A program made the translations under genes and the position numbers. A DNA stretch of 64,000 nt, from IMG/VR virus record IMGVR_UViG_3300031857_000002, positions 62,001 to 126,000 of that record. One strand, written 5' to 3'. The notes below the pieces were generated by a model. The model saw only the letters and a list, made by a program, of their open reading frames with translations, made no database searches and was not told where the DNA came from. This document shows positions 34,661 to 51,085 of this stretch, piece by piece (position 1 is the stretch's first letter; every line of letters begins with the position of its first letter).

Positions 34661-34994
34661 TGAAGAATTTTGGCAAGCTCTAAGAGACATGCCCGAGCCC
34701 AAACCTGTTGATTATAGAATCTACTACAACGAACAAGGTGAGTTGTTATTCTACAGCATGGAAGATGTGCCAGGTACATACTTGACTATTGATGCAGAGA
34801 CCTTTTCCCGTAGTGCAACCAATGTAATTGTGCAAGATGGCCAGCTGTTTGAGATCATCAACGCAACTACAGCAAAACTAGAACACTCAGACACAGGTAC
34901 ACCTTGTGACCCCGATGATGTGTGCATTGTAGTACCTGAAACACAACAACACCAAAGATGGAGCAAACAAAGACATGGCCTTAAACCAAATTGA
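34653..34994 (+). CDS. hypothetical protein
   Basis: ATG at 34653 after AGGAG, shorter than the ORF-track call. Confidence 0.7.
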   Translation: MTDEEFWQALRDMPEPKPVDYRIYYNEQGELLFYSMEDVPGTYLTIDAETFSRSATNVIVQDGQLFEIINATTAKLEHSDTGTPCDPDDVCIVVPETQQHQRWSKQRHGLKPN

Positions 34995-35907: not shown

Positions 35908-36572
35908 TGCTAACTGTTTTTGAAAATACAGTAACCTCTGCTGAAATAGCAAATATGCAACAGCAGTTCAGTCACTTACATACCACTGTTAAATTTACTG
36001 ATACGTATCATATTACATCTCGTGAAGAAATACATGAACTTTATAACTCAAACGCAGAATCATTGATTCAACAACAACGTATTGACATACATACGCATCC
36101 GATTGCAGATGTTGTTAGGAATATAGTTAATAGGATTTTACCGTCGCCGTTGAATTTGTCAGTTCCTATACTTTTTTCAAGATCAGTTTATCCTATTGGA
36201 ATTCATATTGATTCAAACAAGAAAGAGCATAATGGACACACTCTAATGATTCCGTTGACGTTTGACACACGTATCAAGACACTAGTATGGAAAGAAACTG
36301 CTATTGATCCAATTGCACTGAATGAGATATTTTATCGTTTTCAACACAATATTAAATCGTTTACATTACAGCCAAAAATTTCTAACAGATTTGATTTAAG
36401 AAACTGTTGGCTAGGAACACCATCCATTGTGGATTTTTTAGAACTAGATGGAATAGCCGAATGGCAAGAAGGATCTATATTTAAATTTAATCGTCAACAA
36501 TTGCATGCCAGTAATAACTTCAAGGCATCTGTAGAGTTTAAAGATTACGTCTTGATACATAATAATGAATAA
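35901..36572 (+). CDS. putative 2OG-Fe(II)/cupin-type oxygenase
   Basis: HxD (IGIHIDS) plus a distal His (FNRQQLHASNNF) give a facial-triad pattern. Confidence 0.5.
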   Translation: MVMLTVFENTVTSAEIANMQQQFSHLHTTVKFTDTYHITSREEIHELYNSNAESLIQQQRIDIHTHPIADVVRNIVNRILPSPLNLSVPILFSRSVYPIGIHIDSNKKEHNGHTLMIPLTFDTRIKTLVWKETAIDPIALNEIFYRFQHNIKSFTLQPKISNRFDLRNCWLGTPSIVDFLELDGIAEWQEGSIFKFNRQQLHASNNFKASVEFKDYVLIHNNE

Positions 36573-37944
36573 CAAGAGTAATTTTATGAGCTCAGCAGAG
36601 CAAATGAAAGAGGATTTAGGTTCTGCACTATGCCTTGCCAAATGGAAACAGGTCAGTTTGCACTTGCCCACAGGGCTCAACAACTCTTGTTACCATCCGC
36701 CGCTGCATCAGATCACTGCAGATGACTTGACACGTACAGGCGGCCTGCATAATACAGCACACAAGAAGGCACAACGTGTGATGATGATACAGGGCGAAAA
36801 ACCTGCTGAATGTCAGTACTGCTGGAACATGGAAAGCCTGGATAAACTAAGCGATAGACATTATCGTTCTGGTGAGCCCTGGGCTGCTGTGGATCTGGAT
36901 CGCATTAAAAACTCTACAGGCATGGAAGATGATGTTGTTCCCAGTTACGTAGAAGTCAACTTCAACCATGCTTGCAATCTAAAGTGTAGCTATTGCTCGC
37001 CGCAGTTTAGTAGCAGTTGGCAGGACGAAATAGAACGACTGGGTGCGTACCCTACATCAAAGCCGCACAATGCACCAGAGCACTTTATGGGCAACCGCAG
37101 ACCCATACCTGCACGTGAAGCCAATCCTTATGTGGATGCGTTTTGGGAATGGTGGCCCACACTATATCCACAGCTGGAACACTTTCGTATGACCGGAGGC
37201 GAACCGCTAATGGATCGGAATACCTATAGAGTGTTTGATTATGTGCTAGAGCACCCTAGTCCCAAGCTACACCTGAATGTCACAAGTAACTTTTCAGTAG
37301 AAGATGTGTTGTTTGAAAAGTACATGGGCTACGCTAAAAATCTATGTACACCCAACATAGAGCACTTCATGCAGTATGTTAGCCTGGACTCGGGCATTGC
37401 CACACAAGCAGAATACCTACGCCACGGCCTGGACTATGCTCGCATGAGTCGCAATGTTGAACGTTTCTTAACTGAAGTTCCTACTCGTAACAGCCTAACG
37501 TTTATTATCACAATGAACAATTTGAGTGTTACAGGCATGCAACCCATGCTGGAATGGATCTTAAACCTACGCAAGACGCACAGCAGTACATACCAACGTG
37601 TGTGGTTTGATACTCCTGTACTGCGTGAACCTGCGTGGCAGAGTCTACAAATCTTGCCCGAAAGCTACGTGGCGCAACTGGAACGTGCCAAAGACTATAT
37701 GCTGGCTAACTTGATCACAGATGCCAATCCCTTACACGGATTTAAAGATTATGAAGTACAACGGCTAGAACGTGACATTGCCTGGATGCGCGAAGGACAA
37801 TCACAAGATAATAACACAGCAAAGGCAGACTTCTATCGTTTCTTTGCGGAACACGACCGTCGTAGAGGCACGGACTTTTTGCGATCCTTTCCTGAAATGC
37901 GCTCCTGGTGGGCAGAATGCGAGTATCATGCTAGGACAGCATAA
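36565..37944 (+). CDS. radical SAM enzyme 1
   Basis: CNLKCSYC and TGGEP motifs; N-terminal Cys cluster (CLAKW, SCYH, CQYC). Confidence 0.92.
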   Translation: MNNKSNFMSSAEQMKEDLGSALCLAKWKQVSLHLPTGLNNSCYHPPLHQITADDLTRTGGLHNTAHKKAQRVMMIQGEKPAECQYCWNMESLDKLSDRHYRSGEPWAAVDLDRIKNSTGMEDDVVPSYVEVNFNHACNLKCSYCSPQFSSSWQDEIERLGAYPTSKPHNAPEHFMGNRRPIPAREANPYVDAFWEWWPTLYPQLEHFRMTGGEPLMDRNTYRVFDYVLEHPSPKLHLNVTSNFSVEDVLFEKYMGYAKNLCTPNIEHFMQYVSLDSGIATQAEYLRHGLDYARMSRNVERFLTEVPTRNSLTFIITMNNLSVTGMQPMLEWILNLRKTHSSTYQRVWFDTPVLREPAWQSLQILPESYVAQLERAKDYMLANLITDANPLHGFKDYEVQRLERDIAWMREGQSQDNNTAKADFYRFFAEHDRRRGTDFLRSFPEMRSWWAECEYHARTA

Positions 37945-39064
37945 GCTCATAATTGATGAGTGGGCAGAAGTAGTAGACTTGTTGGACCCATATGCCGACG
38001 GGGAATTCTGGACCTGGGCAGATGTTGACTTTGATCCCGCTTGTGTATACATTGTGGGCAGGGTTGTGCTTAAAGATAATTGGCAAGTGATAATAGACTT
38101 GGCCACACAATATCCTGGACGCATTGTGTTCTGTAATCCTGCTGAAGGGTCAGAAACCATCTTGTTACAACTCCGACGCCTGCGTATAGAACCACATGTG
38201 CGTGACGGCCGTATCTTGCTGTTGACATCCGGTGATCTAGAACCCGGGTGGAATCAGATGAGTACAGACTGTTACTTTACCAACATAGTGGACTACACAG
38301 AAAACCAGTCAGCACAGTCACAGGCAGCACTAGACTATAAACAACACAGACCCTACGAGTTTCTATTCTTAAATGGACGACTGCGTCCACATCGCAAAGC
38401 TCTAATAGACGGCCTGCGAGATCAACGGCTATTAGCAAACGCATTGTGGACCAATTTGGGCAGTCATGTAGAAATGGCATTTACTTCCCAACTAGAAACT
38501 CTTGCCACAGAACCCATACGTTTGCTGCCGCCTGAATATGAAATAGAACGTGCTCGTGATAAACTAGCACCCGAGCTATATGCCCGTGGTGGATTTATCA
38601 AACATGAACTGTTTAGCAACACCTGGGGCGATGCTATAGTTAACCCATGTTGCTACACAGACACCTGGTACAGTCTAGTAACAGAAACCATATTTGATTA
38701 CCCACATTCATTTAGAACAGAAAAAATCTACAAGCCCATTTTGATGGCACATCCATTTGTGGTCGCTGCCAACTCTGGCTACTTACGAGACTTGCGTAAC
38801 GCAGGATTTCAGACGTTTGATAGCATAATAGATGAACGCTACGACCAAATTGATTGCCCGCACACACGAATACAGCGTATAATAGAAACAGTGCGGTCGA
38901 TCAGTTGTGGCGGCGCTGAACATTTCTGGGAGGCCTCACGTGACATCTGTAAATACAATCAACAACATCTTGTGGAGTACAATCGCAAACAGCGTACCCT
39001 GCTCCCACAACAATTAGAGCAATTTTTAAATGAACGATCTAGAATTCCGTCAACAACATCTTGA
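37928..39064 (+). CDS. glycosyltransferase-like protein (VTET/TEK family), paralog 1
   Basis: FLFLNGRLRPHR...SLVTETIF...RTEKIYKPI...HPF...LRNAGFQTFD. Likely start is the ATG at 37928. Confidence 0.5.
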   Translation: MLGQHKLIIDEWAEVVDLLDPYADGEFWTWADVDFDPACVYIVGRVVLKDNWQVIIDLATQYPGRIVFCNPAEGSETILLQLRRLRIEPHVRDGRILLLTSGDLEPGWNQMSTDCYFTNIVDYTENQSAQSQAALDYKQHRPYEFLFLNGRLRPHRKALIDGLRDQRLLANALWTNLGSHVEMAFTSQLETLATEPIRLLPPEYEIERARDKLAPELYARGGFIKHELFSNTWGDAIVNPCCYTDTWYSLVTETIFDYPHSFRTEKIYKPILMAHPFVVAANSGYLRDLRNAGFQTFDSIIDERYDQIDCPHTRIQRIIETVRSISCGGAEHFWEASRDICKYNQQHLVEYNRKQRTLLPQQLEQFLNERSRIPSTTS

Positions 39065-40358
39065 CACCAAGTCAGCTAGTTTTTGCGCAGCCAAATGGTA
39101 CAATGCCACAATATGGCTGGGATCGGGACAGACCACAAGTTGCCATCACCCGCCAGCACATCATGTGACTGAAAAAGAAGTAATTATTAATCCTGCTGCC
39201 TTGCACAACACCAAGCAAAAACGTGATGATCGTGCAAAAATGCTGTCAGGTGAACGTCCAGCAGGTTGTGAATACTGCTGGAAGATTGAAGACATGGGCC
39301 GTGATGCTATTAGCGACCGTGTGTATAAATCACGAATATATCCTATAGAATCATTAAATGAAGCATTTGCTACTCCTGTACATGAAGATGTCAACCTACG
39401 CACCTTGGAAATTGCTTTTGATCGCACTTGCCAGCTTGCTTGCAGTTATTGTAACCCTGCATTTTCAAGCACTTGGGTCAATGATATCAAACGACACGGA
39501 CCTTATATTAAGCTGGAGTCAGATGGTCGCAACCACTTTACTCATGAGCATAATAGTGCTCAACTTTATAAATTCGGTGAGGATAATCCTTACGTCAACG
39601 CCTTCTTTGAATGGTGGGAAACAGACCTCCATCGAACCTTACAAGAACTAAGAATCACAGGCGGCGAGCCCTTGATGTCAGGTTATACTTGGAAGCTGAT
39701 AGACTGGTTCAAATTGAACCAAGGCAAGTCCAATACAAAACTAGCTATTAACTCAAATTTGAGTTTTGAAACTGAAAAGCTCACTGAGTTCATTGACGCC
39801 ATCCGTCCACTTCCGCATGTGGAACTGTACACCTCAATGGAAGCAGTAGGACGCCAGGCCGAATACATACGTGATGGTCTAGACTATGCACAATGGCTGA
39901 CCAACATGCACACGCTGTTAAGCAGTAACACAGTAAAAGCAGTTCATGTGATGTGTACAATCAATGCACTATGCTTGACCACCCTGCCTGAACTACTGGA
40001 TCAGTTGTTGGAAATGAAGCGCACATACGGGCGCGAGCGTGTGAACTTTACATTAAATATATTACGATTCCCTAGCTTTCAATCAGCACTAGTATTACCC
40101 AATGAACTACGCAATCAATTCCGGGACAACTTACAAGCCTGGGCAAACGCCAACAAAAATGATCCTGTGTTGCACGAGCACGAAATCAATCATACACAAC
40201 GTCTAATAGACTATTTGGATGTGGTCAAAACACCGCATTCAGACACATTTGAAATGCCCAAGTTGCATAATGATTTCCGTGAATTTTACACACAGTACGA
40301 TTCTCGTAGAAATCACAACTTTGCAACGACATTTCCTGAATTAAAGAAATTGCTATGA
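39030..40358 (+). CDS. radical SAM enzyme 2
   Basis: CQLACSYC and TGGEP motifs; N-terminal CAAKW, SCHH, CEYC. Confidence 0.92.
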   Translation: MNDLEFRQQHLDTKSASFCAAKWYNATIWLGSGQTTSCHHPPAHHVTEKEVIINPAALHNTKQKRDDRAKMLSGERPAGCEYCWKIEDMGRDAISDRVYKSRIYPIESLNEAFATPVHEDVNLRTLEIAFDRTCQLACSYCNPAFSSTWVNDIKRHGPYIKLESDGRNHFTHEHNSAQLYKFGEDNPYVNAFFEWWETDLHRTLQELRITGGEPLMSGYTWKLIDWFKLNQGKSNTKLAINSNLSFETEKLTEFIDAIRPLPHVELYTSMEAVGRQAEYIRDGLDYAQWLTNMHTLLSSNTVKAVHVMCTINALCLTTLPELLDQLLEMKRTYGRERVNFTLNILRFPSFQSALVLPNELRNQFRDNLQAWANANKNDPVLHEHEINHTQRLIDYLDVVKTPHSDTFEMPKLHNDFREFYTQYDSRRNHNFATTFPELKKLL

Positions 40359-41644
40359 CACAATACAAATACAACAGCAGTGATCTAGTTCGCGGCAATA
40401 TGTCAGAATTAACTGAACGTGAGCATTTTCTTTTAACAGAATCTAAAACATTCTGCATTTATCCTTGGATTCATTTACATGCTTATCCCACAGGCGAAGC
40501 ATATCCTTGCTGTCATGCTGAAATGGGTGTGGGACAAATTGGTAATTGCCGTACAAACACATTAAAAGAAATATGGAATAGTCCTGCACAAAAGAAACTA
40601 CGCACAGACATGCTGTCAGAAACACCCAATGCTGCCTGTGGACGTTGTTACGAACAGGAAAAGTCTGGCTTCTTTACAGGGCGCCAGAGTGCAAACAAAC
40701 ATCATGGGCATCATGTGGACCGTGTGCATTCTACAGATAGCACAGGGCAAGTTGATCAATTTGAAATGACCTATTGGGATATCCGTTTCTCAAACCTATG
40801 CAATTTAAAGTGCCGTAGTTGTGGGCATATCTTTAGTTCACAGTGGTATCAAGATCAAGCAAAATTAGCCGGCGGCGACTGGAAAGATCGCAACACAGTA
40901 CTAAACTACGCAGGCCGTACAGAAACCGACATGTGGGAACAACTAGAGCCCCATTTAGACTATGTAGAACAGATCTACTTTGCTGGTGGCGAACCCTTGT
41001 TGATGGAAGAACACTATCATATTCTTGATGAATTGGTCAAGCGCGGCCGCTTTGATGTGCGACTGATATACAACACCAACTTCACGCACACAGACCTTAA
41101 AGGGCGCAGTGTGTTTGAATACTGGAAACAATTTAAATCAGTTGCTGTAGGTGCCAGTCTGGATGCACACGGAGCACCAGCAGAGTACATACGCAAAGGC
41201 ACAGTATGGCGAGACGTAATAAAGAACCGTCATGACATGTTGCGCATTTGTCCCCAAGTGGACTTTTACATTTCGCCCACACTCAGCATATTAAATGCAC
41301 GACACTTGCCTGGATTCCATCGTGAATGGGTTGCTGCCGGACTGCTACGCCCACAGGATCTAAACGTAAACATCCTACAAGACCCTGCGTATTTGCGCAT
41401 AGACATTGCGCCGCCTGAATACAAAGCAGAACTAATCCAACTGTATCAACAGCATATTTTGTGGTTGCAAGGCCAAGACCCCTTGGGCCGTGCTACACAA
41501 GGATTTGAATCAGCTATCAACTATCTGCAGGCCACTGATAACTCGCATCTAATACCTAAATTCTGGGCCAAAACCCATGAACTAGATGCAATTAGAAAAG
41601 AAAACATCCTGGAGGTTATTCCTGAATTGGCAGCATTAAAATGA
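40355..41644 (+). CDS. radical SAM enzyme 3 (twitch/SPASM-like)
   Basis: CNLKCRSC and AGGEP motifs; N-terminal CIYPW..G.AYPCC...CGRC. Confidence 0.92.
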   Translation: MTQYKYNSSDLVRGNMSELTEREHFLLTESKTFCIYPWIHLHAYPTGEAYPCCHAEMGVGQIGNCRTNTLKEIWNSPAQKKLRTDMLSETPNAACGRCYEQEKSGFFTGRQSANKHHGHHVDRVHSTDSTGQVDQFEMTYWDIRFSNLCNLKCRSCGHIFSSQWYQDQAKLAGGDWKDRNTVLNYAGRTETDMWEQLEPHLDYVEQIYFAGGEPLLMEEHYHILDELVKRGRFDVRLIYNTNFTHTDLKGRSVFEYWKQFKSVAVGASLDAHGAPAEYIRKGTVWRDVIKNRHDMLRICPQVDFYISPTLSILNARHLPGFHREWVAAGLLRPQDLNVNILQDPAYLRIDIAPPEYKAELIQLYQQHILWLQGQDPLGRATQGFESAINYLQATDNSHLIPKFWAKTHELDAIRKENILEVIPELAALK

Positions 41645-43023
41645 GCACCTGGCAGGAATTTTATTCAGCAGTACGAGCCCCGCAGTGGCCCGACTGTGAT
41701 CACGAAGAAAATTTCACACAGCTTCCTGAGTTAATTCAATTGGAATGCATCAATCAATTTGGCTATGTGCCAAATAGTTTTCAAAATAAATCCAAGTTGG
41801 TTAACAAACGTTTTCCAATTGTGAGCAACACAGCTTGCCAGCTCAAATGGACCTGGAGCACTATATATCTAACCACCGAAAACACAGCCAGTTGTCACAG
41901 GACCAATCATCATCAGTTTGGGGATGACTTTGATTTTCATAACACAGCCAGTAAAATAGATGATCGTAAGAGAATGCTTGATGGCAAATGGCCCACAAAA
42001 GGATGTACCTACTGTCAAGATATTGAAACAGCCGGTGGACAAAGTGATCGAATCACAAACTTGAATTTTCCAGGAATTCATGCGCCTCCTGAACTGGATC
42101 AGAATCCTGTGGCAGTGCATGTTACTCCTAGAATACTGGAAGTGTACTTTGACAACACTTGCAATTTAAAATGTCTTTATTGCGGTCCGCACTTTAGCAG
42201 TTTATGGGACGCTGAGAATGTGCGGCATGGTGTGCCCGCATTTGCCAAGAGCAAAAATATTGAAAGCAACAAACAAAAACTATTTGAATGGTTAAAACTT
42301 CACGGGCACACGCTCACAGTGTTTAACATCCTAGGTGGCGAACCCTTATATCAGCCCGAATTAGAACAAGTGCTTGCACTGTTTGAACAGCATCCGGCAC
42401 CCGAGCTTAAACTACAAATGTTCACAAATTTAAATGCTCGATTGCCATACTTGCAAAAAATAATTCAACGAGTTCGAAAGCTAATTGACCGTGGTTGCAT
42501 TAGAGAATTTGAAATAACTGCCAGTCTAGACTGTTGGGGTGCGCCGCAAGAGTATGTGCGATATCCCCTAAACTTGCAAGAGTGGGAACGGAATTTTGAA
42601 TACCTGCTGGATCAATCCTGGATCAATTTGATCATAAACTCAACTGTGACTCCATTGACTGTGAAAACACTGCCAGACTTATTGGAAAAAATAAATCATT
42701 GGAATCATAAACGAAAAGTCTATCACTATCAAAACTCTGTGAACGATCCTGACCATATGTTCATTGATCTGTTTGGAGGTATATTTCAACAAGACTTTGA
42801 TCGTGCCATTGAATTAAAACCTGCACAAACGCCAGAAGAAATTGCCAGCAAGAATTATCTAATAGGTATAGCAAAACAAAGCCGCCACGGTGGACCCAAA
42901 CCAAAACAAATACGTCAACTGTTTAATTTTTTAAATACAATGGATCAAAGACGCAACACACATTGGCCCACTGTATTTCCTTGGTTGGTTGATGAATTTA
43001 AAAAATATAACTTAACACTATGA
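41641..43023 (+). CDS. radical SAM enzyme 4
   Basis: CNLKCLYC and LGGEP motifs; N-terminal CQLKW, SCHR, CTYC, plus an extra ~55-aa N-terminal module. Confidence 0.92.
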   Translation: MSTWQEFYSAVRAPQWPDCDHEENFTQLPELIQLECINQFGYVPNSFQNKSKLVNKRFPIVSNTACQLKWTWSTIYLTTENTASCHRTNHHQFGDDFDFHNTASKIDDRKRMLDGKWPTKGCTYCQDIETAGGQSDRITNLNFPGIHAPPELDQNPVAVHVTPRILEVYFDNTCNLKCLYCGPHFSSLWDAENVRHGVPAFAKSKNIESNKQKLFEWLKLHGHTLTVFNILGGEPLYQPELEQVLALFEQHPAPELKLQMFTNLNARLPYLQKIIQRVRKLIDRGCIREFEITASLDCWGAPQEYVRYPLNLQEWERNFEYLLDQSWINLIINSTVTPLTVKTLPDLLEKINHWNHKRKVYHYQNSVNDPDHMFIDLFGGIFQQDFDRAIELKPAQTPEEIASKNYLIGIAKQSRHGGPKPKQIRQLFNFLNTMDQRRNTHWPTVFPWLVDEFKKYNLTL

Positions 43024-43604
43024 ATGGACTAGCACTAGGTTGTAGCCACACAGCAGGAGTTGGGGTTGATCCCTCAGAATGCTATGTGTCATTGTTGGCT
43101 AAACACTATAACATTAACATTATCAATACTGGAGTTCCTGGCGGCAATGCAAATCACAGTATTGAAACTCTAGTAGCCCACATGCGCAACACTCCGCCTA
43201 AGTTTGTTATAGCACAATGGCCCAATCCCATTAGACGCACTATTTGGCATGGTCATCGTGCCAACAATGAAAATGTAAGTACTGCTGGTGTTGCGTTTCG
43301 TTCTTTATTGGCCGCTGGTGAAAAAAACTTTATTCTACCCTGGTTACAAAATATTATAACAGCTGACACATTGTGTAAACTGGCAGATGTGCCGATTGTT
43401 CACATTCTATTGGAAAATTTAGATTTAAAATATGTTGATATATTGAACAATCAAGGCATAGAGTTACACATGGATTTAAAATTAGAAGGCCGGACTTGGT
43501 TGTTTGATTCGCAAGGGTCGGACAATTTGCACCATTCAGCTCGATGTCATGCCCAATGGGCCGAAAGATTAATTGGATTATTAGATGAAATTACCACACG
43601 ATAA
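43020..43604 (+). CDS. SGNH/GDSL-like hydrolase or acyltransferase
   Basis: Block I-like ALGCSHTAG, GVPGGNAN, and C-terminal DNLHH. Confidence 0.65.
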   Translation: MNGLALGCSHTAGVGVDPSECYVSLLAKHYNINIINTGVPGGNANHSIETLVAHMRNTPPKFVIAQWPNPIRRTIWHGHRANNENVSTAGVAFRSLLAAGEKNFILPWLQNIITADTLCKLADVPIVHILLENLDLKYVDILNNQGIELHMDLKLEGRTWLFDSQGSDNLHHSARCHAQWAERLIGLLDEITTR

Positions 43605-44802: not shown

Positions 44803-46123
44803 CACCTTGTGCATGGCGCCATGGACGCACACATATCTGAGCCCGCAAACTGAGCGTAGAATGTGTTGTGCCAGTCGCGAGCCTGCACAAAACTTTGAAC
44901 AATATATAGACACAGCCGCAGGCACAGGTGTATACACGCCGATGTCGTTGGATGAACACTGGAATTCAGATCACATGAAGTCAGTGCGTCGTAGAATGAT
45001 GTCAGGAGAAACTTTGCCCGAATGCGATGTATGCAATTCAAAGCTGTTGAACACTGATGTGTATCGCAATTACTTTTGGTATTTGTTCAAACACAAATAC
45101 AGTGAAATAGCTACCACAACAGATGAAACAGGCCATACCACCATGCAGCCTGTAAGCTGGGATTATCGATTCTCTAATCTTTGCAATTTTAAATGTAGAA
45201 CATGTGGCGACATGCTGAGTTCAAGCTGGGAAACAGAGCAAAAGAAACACAACACCATTCACTGGGCCGACTCCAAAAACAACTGGATGTTGCCGGCTGT
45301 GCGTGATCAAATTTCAGCATTTCAAGACAGTCAAATTGAAGCAGAATTTGCTGAGGCCGTGGAACAACATCGTATAGAAGAAATATACTGGGTAGGTGGT
45401 GAGCCGTTAATGTATGAACAGCACTGGCGCTACATGAAACGCATAGTAGAGCTGGGCGATGGACCTAGAGTATATGCACGTTACAACACCAATCTGTCTA
45501 GAGTAGAATATAAAGGTATCAATCTTTACACAGACATTCTTGCGCACATACGTGATTGGCAAATTTGTGCCAGCTTAGACGGCACAGGTGCTGTGGGCGA
45601 ATACATACGCACTGGATTAAACTACGCAGAGTTTTTGGAAAACTTCAAGCAAGGCCAACATCATGCTCGCAAAACATTTAGAACGTTTAATGCCAAACAA
45701 ATGCGCTTGGACTTTACATTGACTCTGCCGGGCATGTTTGAAATTGCCAACATGGAAAAGTTGGCACGTGAACTAGATGTGGATTTGCTGACCAAGGTAA
45801 TCTTTAGCTTTGGCCCAGAAATTGTAATGAGTCCATTATGCTTGCCCCGTTCTTTATTGGAACCTTGGATAGATGAGTCACTGGCACAATGTCAAACCAG
45901 GGTCATGCGCGAAATGCTGGAGCAACTAAAGAAAAGACCCACGTTTGAAGAACAATGGCCAGATGAATACGCTGAAGGCATTCGACAAGGCAAAGCTCGT
46001 GTGTTACAGCTAGAAAGCATACGCACAGCGCCTACAGACATGGCTTCTATCCTGGCCCAGCGCCCAGAAATTAAACAATGGTGGGATCAAATTGCCGCCG
46101 TTCGTCGCTATGAAACAGATTAA
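44783..46123 (+). CDS. radical SAM enzyme 6 (twitch/SPASM-like)
   Basis: CNFKCRTC and VGGEP motifs; N-terminal CMAPW...RMCC...CDVC. Likely start is the ATG at 44783. Confidence 0.92.
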   Translation: MTTTKPDTLCMAPWTHTYLSPQTERRMCCASREPAQNFEQYIDTAAGTGVYTPMSLDEHWNSDHMKSVRRRMMSGETLPECDVCNSKLLNTDVYRNYFWYLFKHKYSEIATTTDETGHTTMQPVSWDYRFSNLCNFKCRTCGDMLSSSWETEQKKHNTIHWADSKNNWMLPAVRDQISAFQDSQIEAEFAEAVEQHRIEEIYWVGGEPLMYEQHWRYMKRIVELGDGPRVYARYNTNLSRVEYKGINLYTDILAHIRDWQICASLDGTGAVGEYIRTGLNYAEFLENFKQGQHHARKTFRTFNAKQMRLDFTLTLPGMFEIANMEKLARELDVDLLTKVIFSFGPEIVMSPLCLPRSLLEPWIDESLAQCQTRVMREMLEQLKKRPTFEEQWPDEYAEGIRQGKARVLQLESIRTAPTDMASILAQRPEIKQWWDQIAAVRRYETD

Positions 46124-47177
46124 AATAACTCTACGTGACTTTGCAACAGGCGATTTGTTGCCTGTGTACATAGATGTTGCAGACAACAGTCTAAGCCGCC
46201 GTTGGTTAACAGCACTAAATGAATTATTGCAAAACAATTATCATTTGGAAAAGAACTACTGCTGGTTTGGCTGGCCCAACGGTCCACGCACAGCAGAATA
46301 TATCTGTGATCAAATAAATCAATCAATTGCTGCCATTAATTTAGCCGATATGGGCTATCAAATTACAGATCATTTTGATACCTTGAATACCATTACAGCA
46401 GGTGCTGTGGGAGAAGGCCTGCCAGGCGGCAAACTCATACACGATAAACTAAACTGGTTGCATCGTTATTTTGAAGATTTACAAGGCGTTTCAGGTTCAA
46501 TGAGTCCATTTTACACTCGTGCTGATGCTGCCACACGCTGGCATATCCGACAGTTAAATCTCTTGTGTCACGAATACGAAAGTCTAGTGCTGAGCATGCG
46601 CAAGGCACAACACGCACCTGAATGGGTGCGCCCTAGCCAACTCATGTGTTGGCTAAATGCTCCACGTTTTGAACTAGAACCCGAAGACTACGAACTGTTT
46701 GGTATAGAAACAATCAATCGCAGCCTGGGCGGTGTGTATGCGGGAGTTAACAAAGCAGTAGGTAAGCATCACTGGGAAGTGTTCCATGACGAAGGGCGTG
46801 ACAGTCGTATTGACGAATTAACTACCACAAGTCTAAGAGCACAAACAGAAGCCGCAGGAGATTTTGATATAGAGTGGGCAAGAGATCCTGGCAAGTTCCA
46901 TTGGCAACAACAGCAGTTGAATGAGTTTCGAGACTGGCTAGTAGCCAATGGATTTGATCCCGACAACAAAGCACTCACAATAGGACATCCCAAAGTGGCG
47001 CAAGTTGATTTACTCAAGAGCTTTGGTACAGAAGATCACACAGAAATATGGTGTCAATTGAATGATCATTTAGACGTGTATAAAATAGAGACTGATCAGT
47101 GCGAAGCTACATACAACTATCACTGGAGCGACGCAGACTTTAAACAACGACAAATCCAGTGCATACAAGGAGCATAA
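46110..47177 (+). CDS. hypothetical protein, possibly metal-binding
   Basis: Long ORF inside the operon with LHRYFE and LCHEYE motifs. Likely start is the ATG at 46110. Confidence 0.7.
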   Translation: MKQIKITLRDFATGDLLPVYIDVADNSLSRRWLTALNELLQNNYHLEKNYCWFGWPNGPRTAEYICDQINQSIAAINLADMGYQITDHFDTLNTITAGAVGEGLPGGKLIHDKLNWLHRYFEDLQGVSGSMSPFYTRADAATRWHIRQLNLLCHEYESLVLSMRKAQHAPEWVRPSQLMCWLNAPRFELEPEDYELFGIETINRSLGGVYAGVNKAVGKHHWEVFHDEGRDSRIDELTTTSLRAQTEAAGDFDIEWARDPGKFHWQQQQLNEFRDWLVANGFDPDNKALTIGHPKVAQVDLLKSFGTEDHTEIWCQLNDHLDVYKIETDQCEATYNYHWSDADFKQRQIQCIQGA

Positions 47178-47179
47178 TA

Positions 47180-47281
47180 ATGAACTGGATTAAAAACTTA
47201 TACCATAGAATTCGATTAGAAATTCGTTATCGTCGCAAGCTAAAAGAACTGCGCAAAAGAGACCCATTTATCTACAAATGA
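47180..47281 (+). CDS. 33-aa basic peptide ending in DPFIYK, coupled to the carbamoyltransferase
   Basis: Not in the ORF track. Has an AAGGAG SD and reads MNWIKNLYHRIRLEIRYRRKLKELRKRDPFIYK; its TGA overlaps the next ATG (ATGA). Confidence 0.75.
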   Translation: MNWIKNLYHRIRLEIRYRRKLKELRKRDPFIYK

Positions 47282-48753
47282 AAATACTGGGAATTTCAGC
47301 AGGTTTTCACGACGCTGCCGCTACTGTGCTCCAGGATGGCAATATTCTTTTTGCTGGACATTCAGAACGATACTCAAAGCAAAAGAATGATGCCAACATA
47401 CATGCAGATCTACTAAAGGATGCACTGACACACAGAATAGATCATGTGGCCTATTACGAACGTCCGTGGCTGAAACAACTGCGTCAGTGGTATGCAGGAC
47501 AGGGTATTGAGTGGGATAAAATAACACTAAAACAGGTGCTGGAAAAACAGGTGCCTGAAGCCATGCAGTACATGCCTGCCACAAGCACACACAATCATCA
47601 TGCTTGCCATGCGGCAGCAGGATTCCAAACAAGCCCATACGATCGTGCCACTGTGGTGGTAATAGATGCAGTAGGCGAGTTTGACACAATAACAATCTGG
47701 GCGGCTGAATATGATTCAAAAGGCATGGCAAAGTATCGAAAACTTTGGGCACAACATTATCCACATTCAATTGGACTGTTCTACTCTGCGGCTACTAGCA
47801 GTGTTGGCCTACGCCCATTAGACGAAGAGTACATCTTGATGGGTATGGCCGCTTATGGCAATGCTATACAAGCGGTTAGCATGCAAAAACTAGTTGAAGA
47901 TTCAGATCAAATAAGATTCCGTGATAATCTACACACAGGAATAGACAGTCGATATCTGCAGGATCTTGAAGAATTTGATATTGCCTCTGGCGCACAAGCC
48001 ATTGCAGAACAACTAATCAACAGCGTCATGCGCAGAGCACGTGACTTCAAATTCAGCACTAATTTAGTTTACATGGGCGGCGTTGCTCTTAACTGTAGTG
48101 CTAACCGTAATTTAGGAAAGTATTTTGATAACATATGGATTATGCCTTGTCCTAGCGACGCTGGCAGTAGCCTGGGTGCGGCAGCACTGGCATACAGGAA
48201 ACAGATACATTGGACCAATGCCTACTTGGGTCGCAATATCCCTGGTGATTATCCTGTGGACGATATTATCACTGGCCTGCTACATGATAAAATTGTGGGT
48301 GTGGCCAGTGGTCGTGCCGAATTTGGGCCCAGGGCTCTGGGCAATAGATCACTATTGGCAGACCCCCGTGGCGCAGACATAAAAGATCGTGTGAATGACA
48401 TCAAGCGCAGACAGCAATTCAGACCGTTTGCGCCAGTCATTTTGGAGGAGCATGTTGATATGTATTTTGATATGCCTCATGGCTTCCATAACAGTAGGTA
48501 TATGCAAGTCATTGCTCGCTGTAGGCATCCTCACATATTTCCTGCTATCGTTCATAAGGACGGCACTAGTAGGGTACAGACTGTTCCCCAAGACGGATCG
48601 GGTATAAGGCAGCTACTAGAAGCATGGTACCGGGCAACAGGTTGTCCTATGTTGCTTAACACAAGTCTTAACATACGTGGAGAACCCATGGTAAATGATC
48701 GCGCAGACGCTGATAGATTTGAACAATTATACAGAGTAAAAGTCTGCTCATGA
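47278..48753 (+). CDS. O-carbamoyltransferase (NodU/CmcH/TobZ family)
   Basis: FHDAAA, ERYSKQK, HHACHAAAG, GGVALNC, EFGPRALGNRS, FRPFAP and LLNTSLN motifs. Confidence 0.95.
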   Translation: MKILGISAGFHDAAATVLQDGNILFAGHSERYSKQKNDANIHADLLKDALTHRIDHVAYYERPWLKQLRQWYAGQGIEWDKITLKQVLEKQVPEAMQYMPATSTHNHHACHAAAGFQTSPYDRATVVVIDAVGEFDTITIWAAEYDSKGMAKYRKLWAQHYPHSIGLFYSAATSSVGLRPLDEEYILMGMAAYGNAIQAVSMQKLVEDSDQIRFRDNLHTGIDSRYLQDLEEFDIASGAQAIAEQLINSVMRRARDFKFSTNLVYMGGVALNCSANRNLGKYFDNIWIMPCPSDAGSSLGAAALAYRKQIHWTNAYLGRNIPGDYPVDDIITGLLHDKIVGVASGRAEFGPRALGNRSLLADPRGADIKDRVNDIKRRQQFRPFAPVILEEHVDMYFDMPHGFHNSRYMQVIARCRHPHIFPAIVHKDGTSRVQTVPQDGSGIRQLLEAWYRATGCPMLLNTSLNIRGEPMVNDRADADRFEQLYRVKVCS

Positions 48754-50024
48754 GCGATAAAGTATTTCCAATAAAGAGTGACACAGCCTGTTTGTTAAAA
48801 TGGGCGTGGTCAACAGTGTATCTAGGGCAGGGCACAAGCTCTAGTTGTCATAGAACAGATCAAGCACCTATTCCTGTAGACAACTTTGCGAGTTTTCACA
48901 ATCTACCCAATAAAGTACGTGCTAGAGAAATGATGCGTCGTGGAGAATGGCCACAAGAAGGCTGTCAGTACTGTGAAAAGATTGAGGCAGCAGGCGGACT
49001 CAGTGATAGACAATATCAATTAAAAGCTGGACACGAACGAGACCGCACTCCTGAAGAATTAATTGTTGATCCAGAAACAAATGAAGTAGTGCCCACTATC
49101 TTAGAAGTGTACTTCAGCAACGTGTGTAACATGGCTTGCTTGTACTGCGGAAGTCACTTTAGTACAAAATGGGAAGAAGAAAACAAAAGATTTGGCATAT
49201 TTGAACAAGGGCGTGTGAAGTTTGGATTTAATCAGCCCTCAAACCCCAATTACGAAAAACAACTGGCAGACTTTTGGCAGTATCTAGAAGATAAAGATCG
49301 CTATAAACACATACGCTACTATCAGATCTTGGGCGGGGAACCGTTCTTTCAAAAGGAATTTGATACCAGCTTGGACTTCTGGGAAGCACACCCTAACCCT
49401 GAACTAACGTTCAATATCATTACCAACTTGAAAGTGCCCACAAAGAAGTTCCGAGCATATATTGATCGCTTTGGGGCAATGGTTGAATCAGGTGCGTTGA
49501 AAAGATTACAAATTACAGGCAGCTTAGACGCATGGGGACCGCAAGAAGAATATGTACGCTGGGGACTAGACTTGGCTGAATGGCAAGAGAACTGGGAATA
49601 TCTCTTGGATAAAGACTGGGTTGTGATGTGTATGAATACAGCTATTAGTGCATTGACAATCAAAACACTTCCTGATCTAGTGGAACGCATTAATGGCTGG
49701 AACGCTAGACGCAATCCCTGGAATCCCATCAGCTTCAGTTTTATGAGTGTAATGACACCGCCCGAAATGGTTCCGGACATATTTGGTGCAGGTGTATTTG
49801 ATCAGGATTTTGAGCGTGTGTTAGCAGCCATGCCCACAGACAAGCCAGGATCCCAAGATGCACGTGAACACATGGCAGGCATCATGCGACAGATATCTGC
49901 AGGCCCACGTGATGTTTCACGTATAGAAGATCTAAAGGTTTATTTGACTGAAATAGATCGACGCAGAGGAACCCGTTGGCAAGACTTGTTCCCTTGGCTG
50001 GATCAGCCTTTTATTGTGGTATGA
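48750..50024 (+). CDS. radical SAM enzyme 7
   Basis: CNMACLYC and LGGEP motifs; N-terminal CLLKW, SCHR, CQYC. Visibly paralogous to 41641-43023. Confidence 0.92.
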   Translation: MSDKVFPIKSDTACLLKWAWSTVYLGQGTSSSCHRTDQAPIPVDNFASFHNLPNKVRAREMMRRGEWPQEGCQYCEKIEAAGGLSDRQYQLKAGHERDRTPEELIVDPETNEVVPTILEVYFSNVCNMACLYCGSHFSTKWEEENKRFGIFEQGRVKFGFNQPSNPNYEKQLADFWQYLEDKDRYKHIRYYQILGGEPFFQKEFDTSLDFWEAHPNPELTFNIITNLKVPTKKFRAYIDRFGAMVESGALKRLQITGSLDAWGPQEEYVRWGLDLAEWQENWEYLLDKDWVVMCMNTAISALTIKTLPDLVERINGWNARRNPWNPISFSFMSVMTPPEMVPDIFGAGVFDQDFERVLAAMPTDKPGSQDAREHMAGIMRQISAGPRDVSRIEDLKVYLTEIDRRRGTRWQDLFPWLDQPFIVV

Positions 50025-51085
50025 TTGTCTGTGGGATTGACTTGTTGATCAACGCCCAGGAACTGCTGTAATCCAGAAGAAAAGAATATGTGAAACGAGT
50101 ACTTTTCGTAGGTTTCACGTAAAAATTCAGCAGCCGCTATATGCTCAGGATTGTCGGGGTCGAGCACATCATGCTCGCTGAAGTCGTGCCATGTGCCCCA
50201 ATCTTCTAGCTTGGTAATGCTGCCAATAAATCCAAAATACAAACACAGTTCACAAAAGTTCTTCATGTCTCTGTAGTTGTTTTTTTGCATGACCATTGTG
50301 AGTGCTACATTATGACTGGAACCGTCGGGTTTACTGGTGTTTTCTTTGAGGAATATAAAGTTATCCATGAGCTGTTCCCAGCGTCCGCCCAGTCTAACTT
50401 GTTCATACACATCTGCTGAACCTGCATCTATGCTAATCAAATATTCGTCAATGTGCGCTGTAACAGGATTGTCTGTGAGTTGTTTGCGCAATAACAAGCC
50501 ATTAGTAAACAGTTTGATCCACTGCTTTTCGCGTGGTTTGTATCTGTGTAGCAACGGACGCATGATACTGCTGGCAAGTGGATCGCCATTGCCACTCATG
50601 ATAATTCTGCAAGGTTGTTCAAACTGCTCTAGCATGTCCACTAGATGATTGACCCATGCTAGCTTTTCTTCGTATTTGTCACCACTGGTAATCATTACAG
50701 CATCTTTTCTACAGCTGGGACAATGTAAATTACAGCTTTCATCTATGTTGATACTGATAGTGTATTCAGTTTCAACCATGTCATAGTGCATGACACCACA
50801 ACGTGTGACAGCACAGTTATCAAATGTTCGGTTGTCAATGCTTTGTTGTAGAGCCTGTGCTGTAGGGCTGGCCCACACATCTTCCAGTCGTACAAAGTCT
50901 GTGATTTTGCCCACACTGATAGGCAACCACAGTTCACAACCACACACAAAACAATCGCCTTTCCAATCTACTAGCAGTTTCCTACTGGGTGCGTTACAGT
51001 GATGATCTACCTGTAACTTCAAGTCCTTGTTACGTGGAACAGTGTTCCAGTGAAACTGATTTTCAATTGGAATAACAAACTTCAT
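50003..51085 (-). CDS. radical SAM enzyme 8
   Basis: CNLHCPSC and GNGDP motifs; N-terminal CNAP...GDCFVCGC...CAVTRC. Likely start is the ATG at 51085 (ATGA overlap). Confidence 0.9.
   Translation of the reverse strand: MKFVIPIENQFHWNTVPRNKDLKLQVDHHCNAPSRKLLVDWKGDCFVCGCELWLPISVGKITDFVRLEDVWASPTAQALQQSIDNRTFDNCAVTRCGVMHYDMVETEYTISINIDESCNLHCPSCRKDAVMITSGDKYEEKLAWVNHLVDMLEQFEQPCRIIMSGNGDPLASSIMRPLLHRYKPREKQWIKLFTNGLLLRKQLTDNPVTAHIDEYLISIDAGSADVYEQVRLGGRWEQLMDNFIFLKENTSKPDGSSHNVALTMVMQKNNYRDMKNFCELCLYFGFIGSITKLEDWGTWHDFSEHDVLDPDNPEHIAAAEFLRETYEKYSFHIFFSSGLQQFLGVDQQVNPTDNHTTIKG

What the first reader, a model, noticed from the sequence alone, without database searches (positions are those of the whole stretch)
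36565..51085. Eight radical SAM paralogs, all with the auxiliary Fe-S (twitch/SPASM-like) motif N-terminal to the SAM domain
Seen: every CxxxCxxC enzyme has a Cys cluster ahead of the radical SAM motif, in two visible subtypes. The first is CxxKW..SC(H/Y)(H/R)..CxYC (36565, 39030, 41641, 48750). The second is CxxPW..CC..CxxC (40355, 43585, 44783). 50003-51085 is more divergent. Most also share a C-terminal DxxR....(F/V/I)P(E/W)-like tail. Known: characterised SPASM/twitch domains are C-terminal, and twitch enzymes such as BtrN, HygY and SpeY oxidise or epimerise aminocyclitol/sugar substrates. Inference: this is a permuted, expanded family in which each paralog edits a different position. The SC(H/Y)(H/R) subtype may use a His ligand. 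Eight oxygen-sensitive Fe-S enzymes is a large investment for a phage.
Basis: partly seen in the sequence, partly recalled or inferred. Interest (0 to 1): 0.8.

Follow-up and report, generated by a model that had tools for sequence, protein, structure and literature searches.

The report
Radical SAM gene array in a jumbo phage
A 320-kb freshwater jumbo phage carries about 22 radical SAM genes, eight of them in this window; seven of the eight belong to a catalogued but never characterised family whose extra iron-sulfur ("twitch") domain sits in front of the catalytic domain, and they lie among sugar-modifying genes, so they probably tailor a glycan by chemistry nobody has yet studied.

Summary
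All eight ORFs are radical SAM (rSAM) enzymes with a Cys-rich domain ahead of CxxxCxxC.

- **Family.** Seven score 223-400 bits against NCBIfam NF033640 "N_Twi_rSAM" (cutoff 170). The N-terminal twitch architecture is therefore already catalogued. I found no paper that characterises it.
- **Eighth gene.** 50003-51085(-) is a distant relative with the same domain order.
- **Cysteines.** Four N-terminal Cys are conserved in 105-106 of 106 diverse homologs. Their spacing matches the auxiliary-cluster ligands of BtrN, the only significant PDB match.
- **Subtypes.** Both are real. The SC type is a monophyletic clade with its own SCHHPxxH signature.
- **Conservation.** Five window paralogs form an ancient pentad, each with 1:1 orthologs (64-88% identity) in about 80 of 82 related viral loci.
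- **Neighbours.** Two GT-B glycosyltransferases, a carbamoyltransferase, an amidinotransferase-like gene, and a DegT aminotransferase plus SDR pair.

Best reading: non-redundant radical tailoring enzymes of a phage glycan pathway. The substrate is not shown, and protein modification remains a serious rival.

The parts
36565..37944 (+). A1: N_Twi_rSAM, SC subtype (459 aa); member of the conserved pentad
   Evidence: NF033640 at 296.9 bits. 1:1 orthologs at 67-88% identity in 80 of 82 loci.
37928..39064 (+). GT-B fold glycosyltransferase-like protein (378 aa from the internal ATG)
   Evidence: AF2 model with pLDDT 89 and pTM 0.87. VIA-align Z 10-12 over about 285 residues, whole length; every listed match is a GT-B-fold, sugar-nucleotide-dependent enzyme, nearly all glycosyltransferases. 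No Pfam or PDB sequence hit. Found in 78 of 82 loci.
39030..40358 (+). A2: N_Twi_rSAM, SC subtype (442 aa); pentad member
   Evidence: NF033640 at 318.4 bits. Orthologs at 64-80% identity in 80 loci. 51% identical ortholog in the cultured Ralstonia phage RsoM2USA.
40355..41644 (+). B1: N_Twi_rSAM, CC subtype (429 aa); pentad member and the best match to the family model
   Evidence: NF033640 at 399.7 bits; Pfam SPASM at residues 34-99, E 5e-12. AF2 model with pLDDT 94.9 and pTM 0.92. At least 73% identical orthologs in the 80 IMG/VR loci kept, out of 210 confirmed contigs.
41641..43023 (+). A3: N_Twi_rSAM, SCHR subclade (460 aa); accessory
   Evidence: NF033640 at 223.1 bits. Close orthologs in only 4 loci. 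Co-occurring strains in a lake DNA run lack it (joint 41640->43585).
43020..43604 (+). 194-aa protein of unknown function; accessory
   Evidence: No Pfam, NCBIfam or PHROG hit. Found in 7-9 loci. Strain variants skip 43007->43585.
43585..44802 (+). B2: N_Twi_rSAM, CC subtype (405 aa); pentad member
   Evidence: NF033640 at 328 bits; Pfam SPASM at residues 9-78. Orthologs at 61-83% identity in 82 loci.
44783..46123 (+). B3: N_Twi_rSAM, CC subtype (446 aa from the ATG); pentad member
   Evidence: NF033640 at 279.6 bits; Pfam SPASM at residues 12-87. Orthologs at 67-79% identity in 79 loci.
46092..47177 (+). Conserved 361-aa protein of unknown function
   Evidence: At least 50% identical orthologs in 66 loci. 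No informative family or atlas hit.
47278..48753 (+). Carbamoyltransferase (NodU/CmcH/TobZ type)
   Evidence: Pfam Carbam_trans_N and Carbam_trans_C, E 2e-35 and 1.5e-48. Found in 65 loci at 68% identity. Also follows the rSAM arrays of two divergent phage lineages.
48750..50024 (+). A4: N_Twi_rSAM, SCHR subclade (424 aa); accessory
   Evidence: NF033640 at 225.9 bits. At least 50% identical orthologs in 6 loci only. Sister group to A3.
50003..51085 (-). Divergent rSAM with an N-terminal twitch/SPASM-like domain; not NF033640; lacks the family's C-terminal helical domain; accessory
   Evidence: Pfam Radical_SAM E 4e-10 and SPASM at residues 46-112. NF033640 at only 20 bits. hhalign against the family profile gives 95% probability. 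Found in 6-11 loci.
51082..52101 (-). Amidinotransferase-like protein (guanidino-group-modifying enzyme fold)
   Evidence: ESM Atlas: the nearest clusters (0.97-0.99) include 'putative Amidinotransferase', and more distant ones (about 0.9) 'inosamine-phosphate amidinotransferase 1' with PF02274. 85% identical orthologs in 47 loci. No direct Pfam hit.
52094..53248 (-). Paralog of the GT-B-like protein
   Evidence: Aligns with 37928-39064 in A4 (20% identity; shared invariant E, K, D and R columns). Found in 64 loci.
33088..35907 (+). Three conserved upstream ORFs (33088-33918, 33875-34660, 34975-35907) of unknown function that travel with the array
   Evidence: At least 50% identical orthologs in 69, 72 and 75 loci. 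34975-35907 is at least 80% identical in every listed hit of a search in which all 8000 scored candidates passed E <= 0.001. No Pfam or PDB hit. The DxD-like motifs are my reading of the sequence only.
57704..59753 (-). DegT/PseC-type sugar aminotransferase (57704-58834) and SDR epimerase/dehydratase (58761-59753)
   Evidence: NCBIfam PseC E 2e-43. Pfam Epimerase at 150 bits at genome 120998-121723, which is window 58998-59723.

Best explanation
Shown by sequence:
- Seven of the eight genes are members of the curated but uncharacterised family NF033640 (N_Twi_rSAM). The eighth is a distant cousin with the same layout.
- Each protein has an N-terminal twitch domain of about 80 residues with four invariant Cys (C-x19-C-x41-CxxC). 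A canonical rSAM core follows (CxxxCxxC, GGE), then a helical C-terminal domain ending in DxxR...FPEL.

Inferred mechanism:
- The core [4Fe-4S] cluster cleaves SAM to the 5'-deoxyadenosyl radical, which abstracts a hydrogen from the substrate.
- The twitch domain carries a second, fully Cys-ligated [4Fe-4S] cluster that anchors or oxidises the substrate radical, as in BtrN.

Inferred role:
- The five anciently diverged, individually conserved paralogs (A1, A2, B1, B2, B3) act as non-redundant tailoring steps in a phage-encoded carbohydrate pathway. The steps could be oxidation, epimerisation, dehydration or C-C chemistry on sugar or sugar-nucleotide intermediates.
- They would work with two GT-B glycosyltransferases, a carbamoyltransferase, an amidinotransferase-like enzyme and a DegT aminotransferase/SDR pair.
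- The product most likely decorates the virion or another glycoconjugate made late in infection.
- A3, A4 and the divergent eighth gene are strain-variable accessories.
For: Identity: NF033640 scores of 223-400 bits against a cutoff of 170.

Cys and domain homology:
- Invariant Cys in 105-106 of 106 sequences.
- The N-terminal-domain profile matches only BtrN's twitch domain (residues 166-238, E 0.0023). BtrN C169, C232 and C235 align with invariant Cys; C187 falls one column before the second one.
- Pfam SPASM hits at the N-terminus.

Structure:
- Confident single-globule AF2 model, pLDDT 94.9 and pTM 0.92.
- Its core (model residues ~114-400) aligns best to BlsE (Z 13.8), anSME, CteB and DesII, and no top match covers residues 1-113.

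Non-redundancy: 1:1 orthologs at 64-88% identity against 27-39% between paralogs, in about 80 of 82 loci.

Sugar context:
- GT-B fold neighbour.
- Carbamoyltransferase.
- Amidinotransferase-like gene.
- DegT aminotransferase and SDR.
- The array-plus-carbamoyltransferase module recurs in two divergent phage lineages, one of which (L097) also carries an NAD epimerase and a faint DegT hit.
- A Bacteroidota chromosome has four copies next to a GT2-methyltransferase fusion and a GT-C.
- Dispersed paralogs sit near an SDR, a cytidylyltransferase-like gene and a TPR/GT9-like gene.
- The cyanophage S-SCSM2R is reported with DegT-like, rSAM and amidinotransferase genes together (PMC12801897).

Investment in Fe-S: two phage A-type Fe-S carrier genes, one lying between two rSAM genes.
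Against: - No substrate, product or cluster content is shown.
- Structural neighbours of the core include peptide-modifying enzymes (anSME, CteB, SuiB) at the same Z as the sugar enzymes BlsE and DesII, so the fold does not discriminate.
- The genome has no NTP_transferase, so sugar activation would depend on the host.
- Several conserved module genes have no assignable function.
- Paralogs also sit beside capsid, baseplate/fibre and tailspike genes, which fits protein modification equally well.
- RNA-library contigs over the genes do not prove transcription.
Confidence: 0.5

Rival explanations
1. The enzymes modify proteins or peptides rather than sugars. They would install cross-links, epimerisations or other radical modifications on virion structural proteins (capsid, giant fibre, tailspike) or on a small precursor peptide. 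The glycosyltransferases would then act on the same protein targets.
For: - SPASM/twitch enzymes are mostly peptide maturases. The best sequence hit of the family's core in the PDB is TvgB (8vpo, E 1.6e-10).
- anSME, CteB and SuiB match the model at Z about 13.
- Paralogs lie next to the Gp23 capsid gene, a beta-helix tailspike-like gene, and the baseplate plus 4775-aa ORF block.
- Aeromonas phage 332-Vera is reported with eight rSAM genes inside its structural gene cluster (PMC12390700).
- A Bacteroidota locus pairs two copies with five PhyH dioxygenases and a secreted Peptidase_S74 protein.
- A Thr/Ser/Ala/Gly-rich 321-aa protein lies just upstream at 31765-32730.
Against: - No RRE/PqqD-type domain was detected by Pfam or NCBIfam.
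- No conserved precursor-like small ORF was found in the tightly packed array.
- The strongest conserved partners are small-molecule or sugar enzymes: carbamoyltransferase, amidinotransferase, DegT, SDR.
Confidence: 0.25
2. The module makes a free, aminoglycoside-like or other diffusible secondary metabolite. The BtrN-like rSAMs, StrB1-like amidinotransferase, TobZ-like carbamoyltransferase, DegT aminotransferase and GT-B enzymes would play the roles they have in aminoglycoside pathways.
For: All these enzyme classes co-occur in the module. A cyanophage paper read a similar gene trio as 'antibiotic synthesis genes' (PMC12801897).
Against: - No 2-deoxy-scyllo-inosose synthase/DHQ-synthase-like gene and no myo-inositol-phosphate synthase gene in the 92%-complete genome.
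- No exporter or resistance gene was noticed.
- The same enzyme classes serve ordinary surface-glycan pathways.
Confidence: 0.1
3. The enzymes act on nucleotides or nucleic acids: DNA or tRNA hypermodification, or viperin-like nucleotide chemistry.
For: - Weak core similarity to viperin, MoaA and QueE.
- One divergent module lies near a QueC-like gene, a DNA ligase and PhoH.
- Jumbo phages often modify their DNA (general knowledge).
Against: - Scores to those families are far below their cutoffs.
- Conserved partners are glycosyltransferase, carbamoyl- and amidinotransferase genes, not base-modification genes.
- Five to seventeen distinct paralogs is hard to reconcile with a single base modification.
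Confidence: 0.08
4. The genes are ordinary housekeeping rSAM genes (MoaA, QueE, NrdG activase) picked up from a host.
For: Weak partial hits to MoaA, QueE and NrdG models.
Against: - These hits score 16-29 bits against cutoffs of 131-284, whereas NF033640 scores 223-400 bits.
- No anaerobic RNR or molybdopterin context.
- The family is over cutoff in 0 of 14 control genomes and 4 of 401 Bacteroidota sampled.
- GC content is not distinct from the rest of the window.
Confidence: 0.01

Closest known systems
NCBIfam NF033640, 'N_Twi_rSAM' (twitch domain-containing radical SAM protein)
   Same: Seven window proteins match the model end to end (positions ~1-398) at 223-400 bits against a cutoff of 170. 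They share the twitch-then-rSAM order it is named for. AlphaFold DB holds full-length look-alikes at TM 0.78-0.87.
   Different: Nothing differs in architecture. The family itself has no characterised member that I could find. The window adds a viral multi-paralog context: 17 copies per genome and a conserved pentad.
BtrN (butirosin 2-deoxy-scyllo-inosamine dehydrogenase), the founding twitch-domain rSAM enzyme (PDB 4m7s/4m7t)
   Same: The N-terminal domain profile aligns to BtrN residues 166-238, E 0.0023. The spacing is the same, and BtrN C169, C232 and C235 pair with invariant Cys. C187 lands one column before the second invariant Cys. That these four are BtrN's auxiliary-cluster ligands is from my knowledge of the BtrN structure paper. 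Four Cys imply a single auxiliary cluster.
   Different: In BtrN the twitch domain follows the rSAM core; here it precedes it. A separate helical C-terminal domain with DxxR...FPEL follows the core. Overall sequence similarity outside the twitch domain is only generic rSAM. No aminocyclitol pathway is present.
SPASM-domain rSAM enzymes (anSME, CteB, SuiB, TvgB)
   Same: Pfam SPASM matches the N-terminal domain of the CC-type paralogs and of the eighth gene. The cores align at Z about 13.
   Different: The CX2CX5CX3C seven-Cys signature for two auxiliary clusters is absent: only four conserved Cys. The domain order is reversed, and no RRE was detected.
Sugar-acting rSAM enzymes BlsE (cytosylglucuronate decarboxylase) and DesII (TDP-4-amino-4,6-dideoxyglucose deaminase)
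   Same: These are the best and fifth-best structural matches of the core, at Z 13.8 and 13.2. BlsE is also a top sequence-profile hit, E 2.4e-9. They share a sugar or sugar-nucleotide gene context.
   Different: The aligned part of each covers only the core of the model (residues ~114-400), not the N-terminal domain. Identity is 12-16%. No functional equivalence is shown.
Aeromonas phage vB_AerVM_332-Vera (phiKZ-like), reported with eight rSAM genes in its structural gene cluster
   Same: A jumbo phage with many rSAM genes beside structural genes, called 'highly unusual' by its authors (PMC12390700).
   Different: It belongs to a different phage lineage. Its record is not in the held collection, so I could not test whether its genes belong to NF033640.

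Membership tests
NF033640 N_Twi_rSAM | Whole-protein HMM score at or above the curated cutoff (170 bits), matched end to end | tested here: met
   A1 296.9, A2 318.4, B1 399.7, A3 223.1, B2 328.0, B3 279.6 and A4 225.9 bits, covering model positions ~1-398. The eighth gene (50003-51085) scores 20.2 bits, so it is not a member.
NF033640 N_Twi_rSAM | Twitch-type Cys motif located N-terminal to the CxxxCxxC radical SAM motif | tested here: met
   C34/C53/C95/C98 precede C149/C153/C156 (B1 numbering) and are conserved in 105-106 of 106 sequences.
Radical SAM superfamily | CxxxCxxC cluster motif, GGE SAM-binding motif and partial TIM-barrel core | tested here: met
   Invariant C149/C153/C156 and G211-G212-E213. 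Pfam PF04055 hits. The core aligns to BlsE, anSME, viperin and MoaA at Z 12-14.
Twitch-domain rSAM enzymes (BtrN type) | Domain homologous to the twitch domain, with four Cys for one auxiliary [4Fe-4S] cluster | tested here: met
   The N-terminal-domain profile matches BtrN 166-238, E 0.0023. BtrN C169, C232 and C235 align with invariant Cys; C187 falls one column before the second invariant Cys. There are no further conserved Cys.
Twitch-domain rSAM enzymes (BtrN type) | Twitch domain placed C-terminal to the rSAM core | tested here: not met
   The domain occupies residues ~28-112, before the core that begins near residue 135.
Twitch-domain rSAM enzymes (BtrN type) | Auxiliary [4Fe-4S] cluster actually bound and lying next to the substrate site | not testable with these tools
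   This needs Fe/S quantitation, EPR/Mossbauer or a structure.
SPASM-domain rSAM enzymes | Seven-Cys motif with CX2CX5CX3C binding two auxiliary clusters | tested here: not met
   After the CxxC pair (C95, C98) no further Cys is conserved. Only four N-terminal Cys columns are conserved.
RiPP-maturase rSAM enzymes | RiPP recognition element (PqqD-like) and an adjacent precursor-peptide gene | tested here: inconclusive
   No PqqD/RRE-type Pfam or NCBIfam hit in any of the eight proteins. No conserved small ORF was seen in the array. No dedicated RRE search was run, and substrates could be large virion proteins.
Housekeeping rSAM families MoaA / QueE / NrdG activase | Score at or above each family's curated cutoff | tested here: not met
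   Best scores are 16-29 bits against cutoffs of 284, 260 and 131 bits.
Aminoglycoside/aminocyclitol biosynthetic pathway | A cyclitol-forming enzyme (2-deoxy-scyllo-inosose synthase of the DHQ-synthase family, or myo-inositol-1-phosphate synthase) | tested here: not met
   No PF01761 or PF07994 match in the 320-kb genome, which is 92% complete.

The most novel reading that the evidence does not exclude
N_Twi_rSAM is a largely virus-borne radical SAM family whose paralogs each catalyse a different, so far undescribed radical transformation. Abundant freshwater and marine jumbo phages would use a fixed five-enzyme set, plus strain-variable extras and their own Fe-S carrier proteins, to build a heavily tailored glycan or glycoconjugate of a new class on the virion. 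The SC clade, with its SCHHPxxH motif, could carry an additional metal or redox site beside the auxiliary cluster.
Probability: 0.3. Interest if true: 0.85.

Novelty: new member of a known kind. Interest (0 to 1): 0.6.

Why it matters
The family is large. A profile search of 1.84 billion representatives found 8,661 clusters (50% identity) at E <= 1e-30. I found no paper that characterises a member. It is rare in the cellular genomes sampled: 0 of 14 controls and 4 of 401 Bacteroidota. It is abundant in viral contigs, with at least 210 IMG/VR contigs for one ortholog alone.

A phage that keeps 17 copies, about 22 rSAM genes in all and two Fe-S carrier genes is paying a high cost for radical chemistry. 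It lives in lake water; whether those waters are oxic was not established. Five of the copies are individually conserved at about 70-77% median identity across roughly 80 related viral loci.

Working out the product would add new rSAM reactions. It would show what the reversed twitch arrangement does. It would also explain a conserved trait of an abundant clade of uncultured jumbo phages. Cultured carriers exist in which this can be tested: Vibrio phages K566/K567 and Ralstonia phage RsoM2USA.

Tried and rejected
- **Nucleotide search against phages.** A search of the whole array found no match. Protein searches found only four and three records. PHROGs barely knows the family.
- **Genome-contig scan with the paralog alignment.** It failed because there is no conserved 7-10-residue stretch. 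The single-protein scan found only two contigs, binned in a Haliscomenobacter MAG; they look like phage contigs.
- **Relatives of a virus record.** These cannot be drawn.
- **Literature.** Searches for NF033640, 'N-terminal twitch', 'N-terminal SPASM' and virion/glycan/jumbo terms found nothing relevant.
- **Neighbour annotation.** Pfam, NCBIfam, PHROGs and PDB-profile searches gave nothing for 33088, 33875, 34975, 35901, 43020 and 46092. The atlas gave nothing for 46092. A homolog search for 34975 returned only 'hypothetical' proteins.
- **Aminocyclitol reading.** Rejected as unsupported: no DOIS/DHQS-like or MIPS gene.
- **Reductant and SAM supply.** No phage flavodoxin, 2Fe-2S ferredoxin or SAM synthetase was found.
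- **His as an obligatory cluster ligand in the SC subtype.** Rejected as unnecessary, because all four Cys persist.
- **RNA evidence.** Two metatranscriptome libraries hold 90-99% similar contigs over parts of A2, B1, A3 and B2. DNA carry-over cannot be excluded, so I do not count this as proof of expression.
- **Aeromonas phage 332-Vera.** It could not be tested for family membership because its record is not held.

Full report
**1. What is in the sequence**

The stated interval holds a tightly packed, mostly co-directional gene array. Eight ORFs carry CxxxCxxC and hit Pfam Radical_SAM.

| Name | Coordinates | Strand |
|---|---|---|
| A1 | 36565-37944 | + |
| A2 | 39030-40358 | + |
| B1 | 40355-41644 | + |
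| A3 | 41641-43023 | + |
| B2 | 43585-44802 | + |
| B3 | 44783-46123 | + |
| A4 | 48750-50024 | + |
| divergent eighth gene | 50003-51085 | - |

GC content across the array (0.42-0.45) is no different from the rest of the window.

The window is bases 62001-126000 of a 320,175-bp IMG/VR virus record estimated 92% complete. Upstream genes are virion proteins, a baseplate hub and a baseplate wedge. A 4775-aa ORF lies there too. The wedge protein is about 34% identical to those of jumbo myophages such as GAP32, CBB and Atu_ph07. Near-identical DNA occurs in lake-water and freshwater metagenomes from about a dozen studies.

**2. The N-terminal Cys domain is real and is a twitch domain**

- In all 16 full-length paralogs of this genome, four Cys columns precede the rSAM motif.
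- I added 90 representatives taken from clusters at 50% identity. C34 and C53 (B1 numbering) are then Cys in 105 of 106 sequences. C95, C98 and the three rSAM Cys are Cys in 106 of 106.
- Pfam's SPASM model matches the N-terminus of B1 (residues 34-99, E 5e-12), B2, B3 and the eighth gene.
- A profile of the N-terminal domain alone has one significant match in the PDB: the C-terminal twitch domain of BtrN (residues 166-238, E 0.0023).
- That alignment pairs the first, third and fourth invariant Cys with BtrN C169, C232 and C235. BtrN C187 falls one column before the second invariant Cys, on the C/S position. By my knowledge of the BtrN structure paper, these four residues are its auxiliary-cluster ligands.
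- The spacing is nearly identical: 19 and 42 residues here, 18 and 45 in BtrN.
- No further Cys is conserved. This is a one-cluster twitch domain, not a two-cluster SPASM domain.

**3. The architecture is already catalogued**

- Seven of the eight proteins match NCBIfam NF033640, named N_Twi_rSAM, end to end at 223-400 bits against a cutoff of 170.
- The AlphaFold DB cluster library holds full-length look-alikes, one named 'Twitch domain-containing radical SAM protein', at TM 0.78-0.87.
- Full-text searches found no paper on it.
- No solved structure covers the arrangement. The AF2 model of B1 is confident (pLDDT 94.9, pTM 0.92). Its best PDB neighbours are BlsE (Z 13.8), anSME, CteB, DesII, SuiB, viperin and MoaA. 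They align only from about residue 114-139 onward, leaving the twitch domain unmatched.
- Scores to MoaA, QueE and NrdG are 16-29 bits against cutoffs of 131-284.

**4. The two subtypes and the tail**

- Position 52 is Cys in 66 sequences and Ser in 40.
- The Ser type has its own signature: CxxKW with an invariant Lys, an invariant Leu, and G-x-T-H-S-C-H-H-P-x-x-H. The three His are present in 30, 30 and 35 of 40 sequences.
- The Ser type is a single clade with support 1.0, nested among CC-type sequences. A3 and A4 share one subclade, A1 is in a second, and A2 is in a third.
- All four Cys persist in this clade, so a His ligand is not required. The His-rich motif remains unexplained.
- The C-terminal DxxR...FPEL tail is conserved: D411 and R414 in at least 90% of sequences.
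- The eighth gene is a distant relative with the same domain order (hhalign 95%, E 3e-8). The alignment ends before the family's C-terminal domain.

**5. The scale is larger than reported**

- The genome has 17 NF033640 matches over the cutoff.
- It also has four further rSAM/SPASM-like genes and a B12-binding rSAM. The total is about 22.
- It encodes two A-type Fe-S carrier proteins (PF01521). One lies between an N_Twi gene and another rSAM gene.
- No flavodoxin, 2Fe-2S ferredoxin or SAM synthetase was found.
- Five related, 97-100% complete phage genomes of 343-353 kb carry 6-16 copies each, with a syntenic core cluster.

**6. An ancient, conserved pentad**

- I compared 82 related loci: 80 IMG/VR loci and two MAG contigs.
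- A1, A2, B1, B2 and B3 each have a 1:1 ortholog at 64-88% identity in about 80 of the 82. Paralogs share only 27-39%.
- A3, A4, the 194-aa gene and the eighth rSAM have close orthologs in only 4-7 loci.
- Co-occurring strains in a lake DNA run lack A3 and the 194-aa gene.
- Separate purifying selection on each paralog argues for distinct, non-redundant roles.
- The family profile finds 8,661 clusters at E <= 1e-30. The top hits are two- and three-fold tandem fusions.
- The family is rare in sampled cellular genomes: 0 of 14 controls and 4 of 401 Bacteroidota, one of which carries binned phage contigs.

**7. Context points to carbohydrate chemistry**

- The gene between A1 and A2 (37928-39064) has no sequence-level annotation. 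Its model (pLDDT 89) aligns over its whole length to GT-B-fold, sugar-nucleotide-dependent enzymes only, nearly all glycosyltransferases, at Z 10-12. It has a paralog at 52094-53248(-).
- The module also holds a carbamoyltransferase and an amidinotransferase-like gene that is 85% conserved. Nearby are a DegT/PseC-type aminotransferase and an SDR epimerase/dehydratase.
- Two divergent family members from other phage lineages sit in the same kind of module: four to six tandem rSAM genes followed by a carbamoyltransferase. One lineage (L097) also has an NAD epimerase and a faint DegT hit.
- A Bacteroidota chromosome has four copies beside a GT2-methyltransferase fusion and a GT-C enzyme. Another has two copies among five PhyH dioxygenases.
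- Dispersed paralogs in this genome sit near an SDR, a cytidylyltransferase-like gene, a TPR/GT9-like gene, the Gp23 capsid gene and a beta-helix tailspike-like gene.
- A cyanophage paper reports a DegT-like gene, an rSAM and an inosamine amidinotransferase together (PMC12801897).
- A phiKZ-like Aeromonas phage is reported with eight rSAM genes inside its structural cluster (PMC12390700).

**8. Interpretation**

- Shown: family membership, the conserved four-Cys twitch motif placed before the core, the subtype structure, the expansion, the orthology pattern and the gene context.
- Inferred: each enzyme binds two [4Fe-4S] clusters and uses the 5'-deoxyadenosyl radical to tailor a sugar or glycan intermediate; the product decorates the virion or another late glycoconjugate.
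- I put about 0.5 on this reading.
- The main rival is radical modification of virion proteins or peptides, at about 0.25. The fold neighbours and the adjacency to structural genes fit it equally well.
- A free aminoglycoside-like metabolite is less likely, because no cyclitol synthase is encoded.
- Nucleic-acid modification and housekeeping roles are poorly supported.

**9. Verdict**

The genes are new members of a catalogued but uncharacterised family. The conserved phage module and its chemistry are, as far as I could find, undescribed. Cultured phages carrying family members (Vibrio K566/K567, Ralstonia RsoM2USA) make it testable.

Noticed in passing
window 14833-29160 (+): A single 4775-aa ORF directly after the baseplate wedge gene (11351-14833). 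It is presumably a giant fibre or structural protein. It was not analysed.
   Followed up: no
window 31765-32730 (+): A 321-aa protein very rich in Thr, Ser, Ala and Gly lies immediately upstream of the conserved module. It is a conceivable glycosylation or modification target, found in 44-48 related loci.
   Followed up: partly
genome G000:C1:308172-308474(-) and 235565-235867(-), outside the window: Two phage-encoded A-type Fe-S cluster carrier genes (PF01521, 66.6 and 60.6 bits). The first lies between an N_Twi_rSAM gene (306760-308187) and another rSAM gene (308465-309469).
   Followed up: partly
genome G000:C1:244878-246854(-), outside the window: A 658-aa B12-binding radical SAM protein. 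Its best partial NCBIfam hits are PhpK-type P-methyltransferase and RiPP C-methyltransferase, all below cutoff.
   Followed up: no
window 41640-43585 and 43007-43585: Contigs of a freshwater DNA run join 41640 to 43585 and 43007 to 43585. Co-occurring strains therefore lack A3 plus the 194-aa gene, or the 194-aa gene alone.
   Followed up: partly
proteins P0121-P0152 (metagenome representatives): The highest-scoring family hits are 750-1400-aa proteins holding two or three complete N_Twi_rSAM units in tandem, so natural fusions of paralogs exist.
   Followed up: no
SC-type paralogs, e.g. window 36565-37944 and 39030-40358, around the second twitch Cys: A clade-specific His-rich motif S-C-H-H-P-x-x-H, plus an invariant Lys in CxxKW. 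All four Cys ligands remain, so the role of the His residues is unexplained.
   Followed up: partly
L015 and L016 (contigs of 183 and 148 kb in a 'Haliscomenobacter sp.' MAG): Two contigs binned in a Bacteroidota MAG carry the whole rSAM array at about 77% identity (12 family hits). They are probably two related jumbo-phage genomes mis-binned, or a hint to the host.
   Followed up: partly
L097:9993-10097 and L100:419-523: In two divergent phage modules, a 34-aa ORF with a basic middle and a C-terminal D-(P/E)-F-I-Y-(K/P) motif lies beside the rSAM array. I did not look for a counterpart in the window.
   Followed up: no
L109 (G085:C2:1207000-1226999): A Bacteroidota chromosomal locus with two N_Twi_rSAM genes flanked by five PhyH-type dioxygenases, a WelO5-like enzyme, a methyltransferase, a reductive-dehalogenase-like Fe-S protein and a T9SS-secreted Peptidase_S74 protein.
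   Followed up: partly
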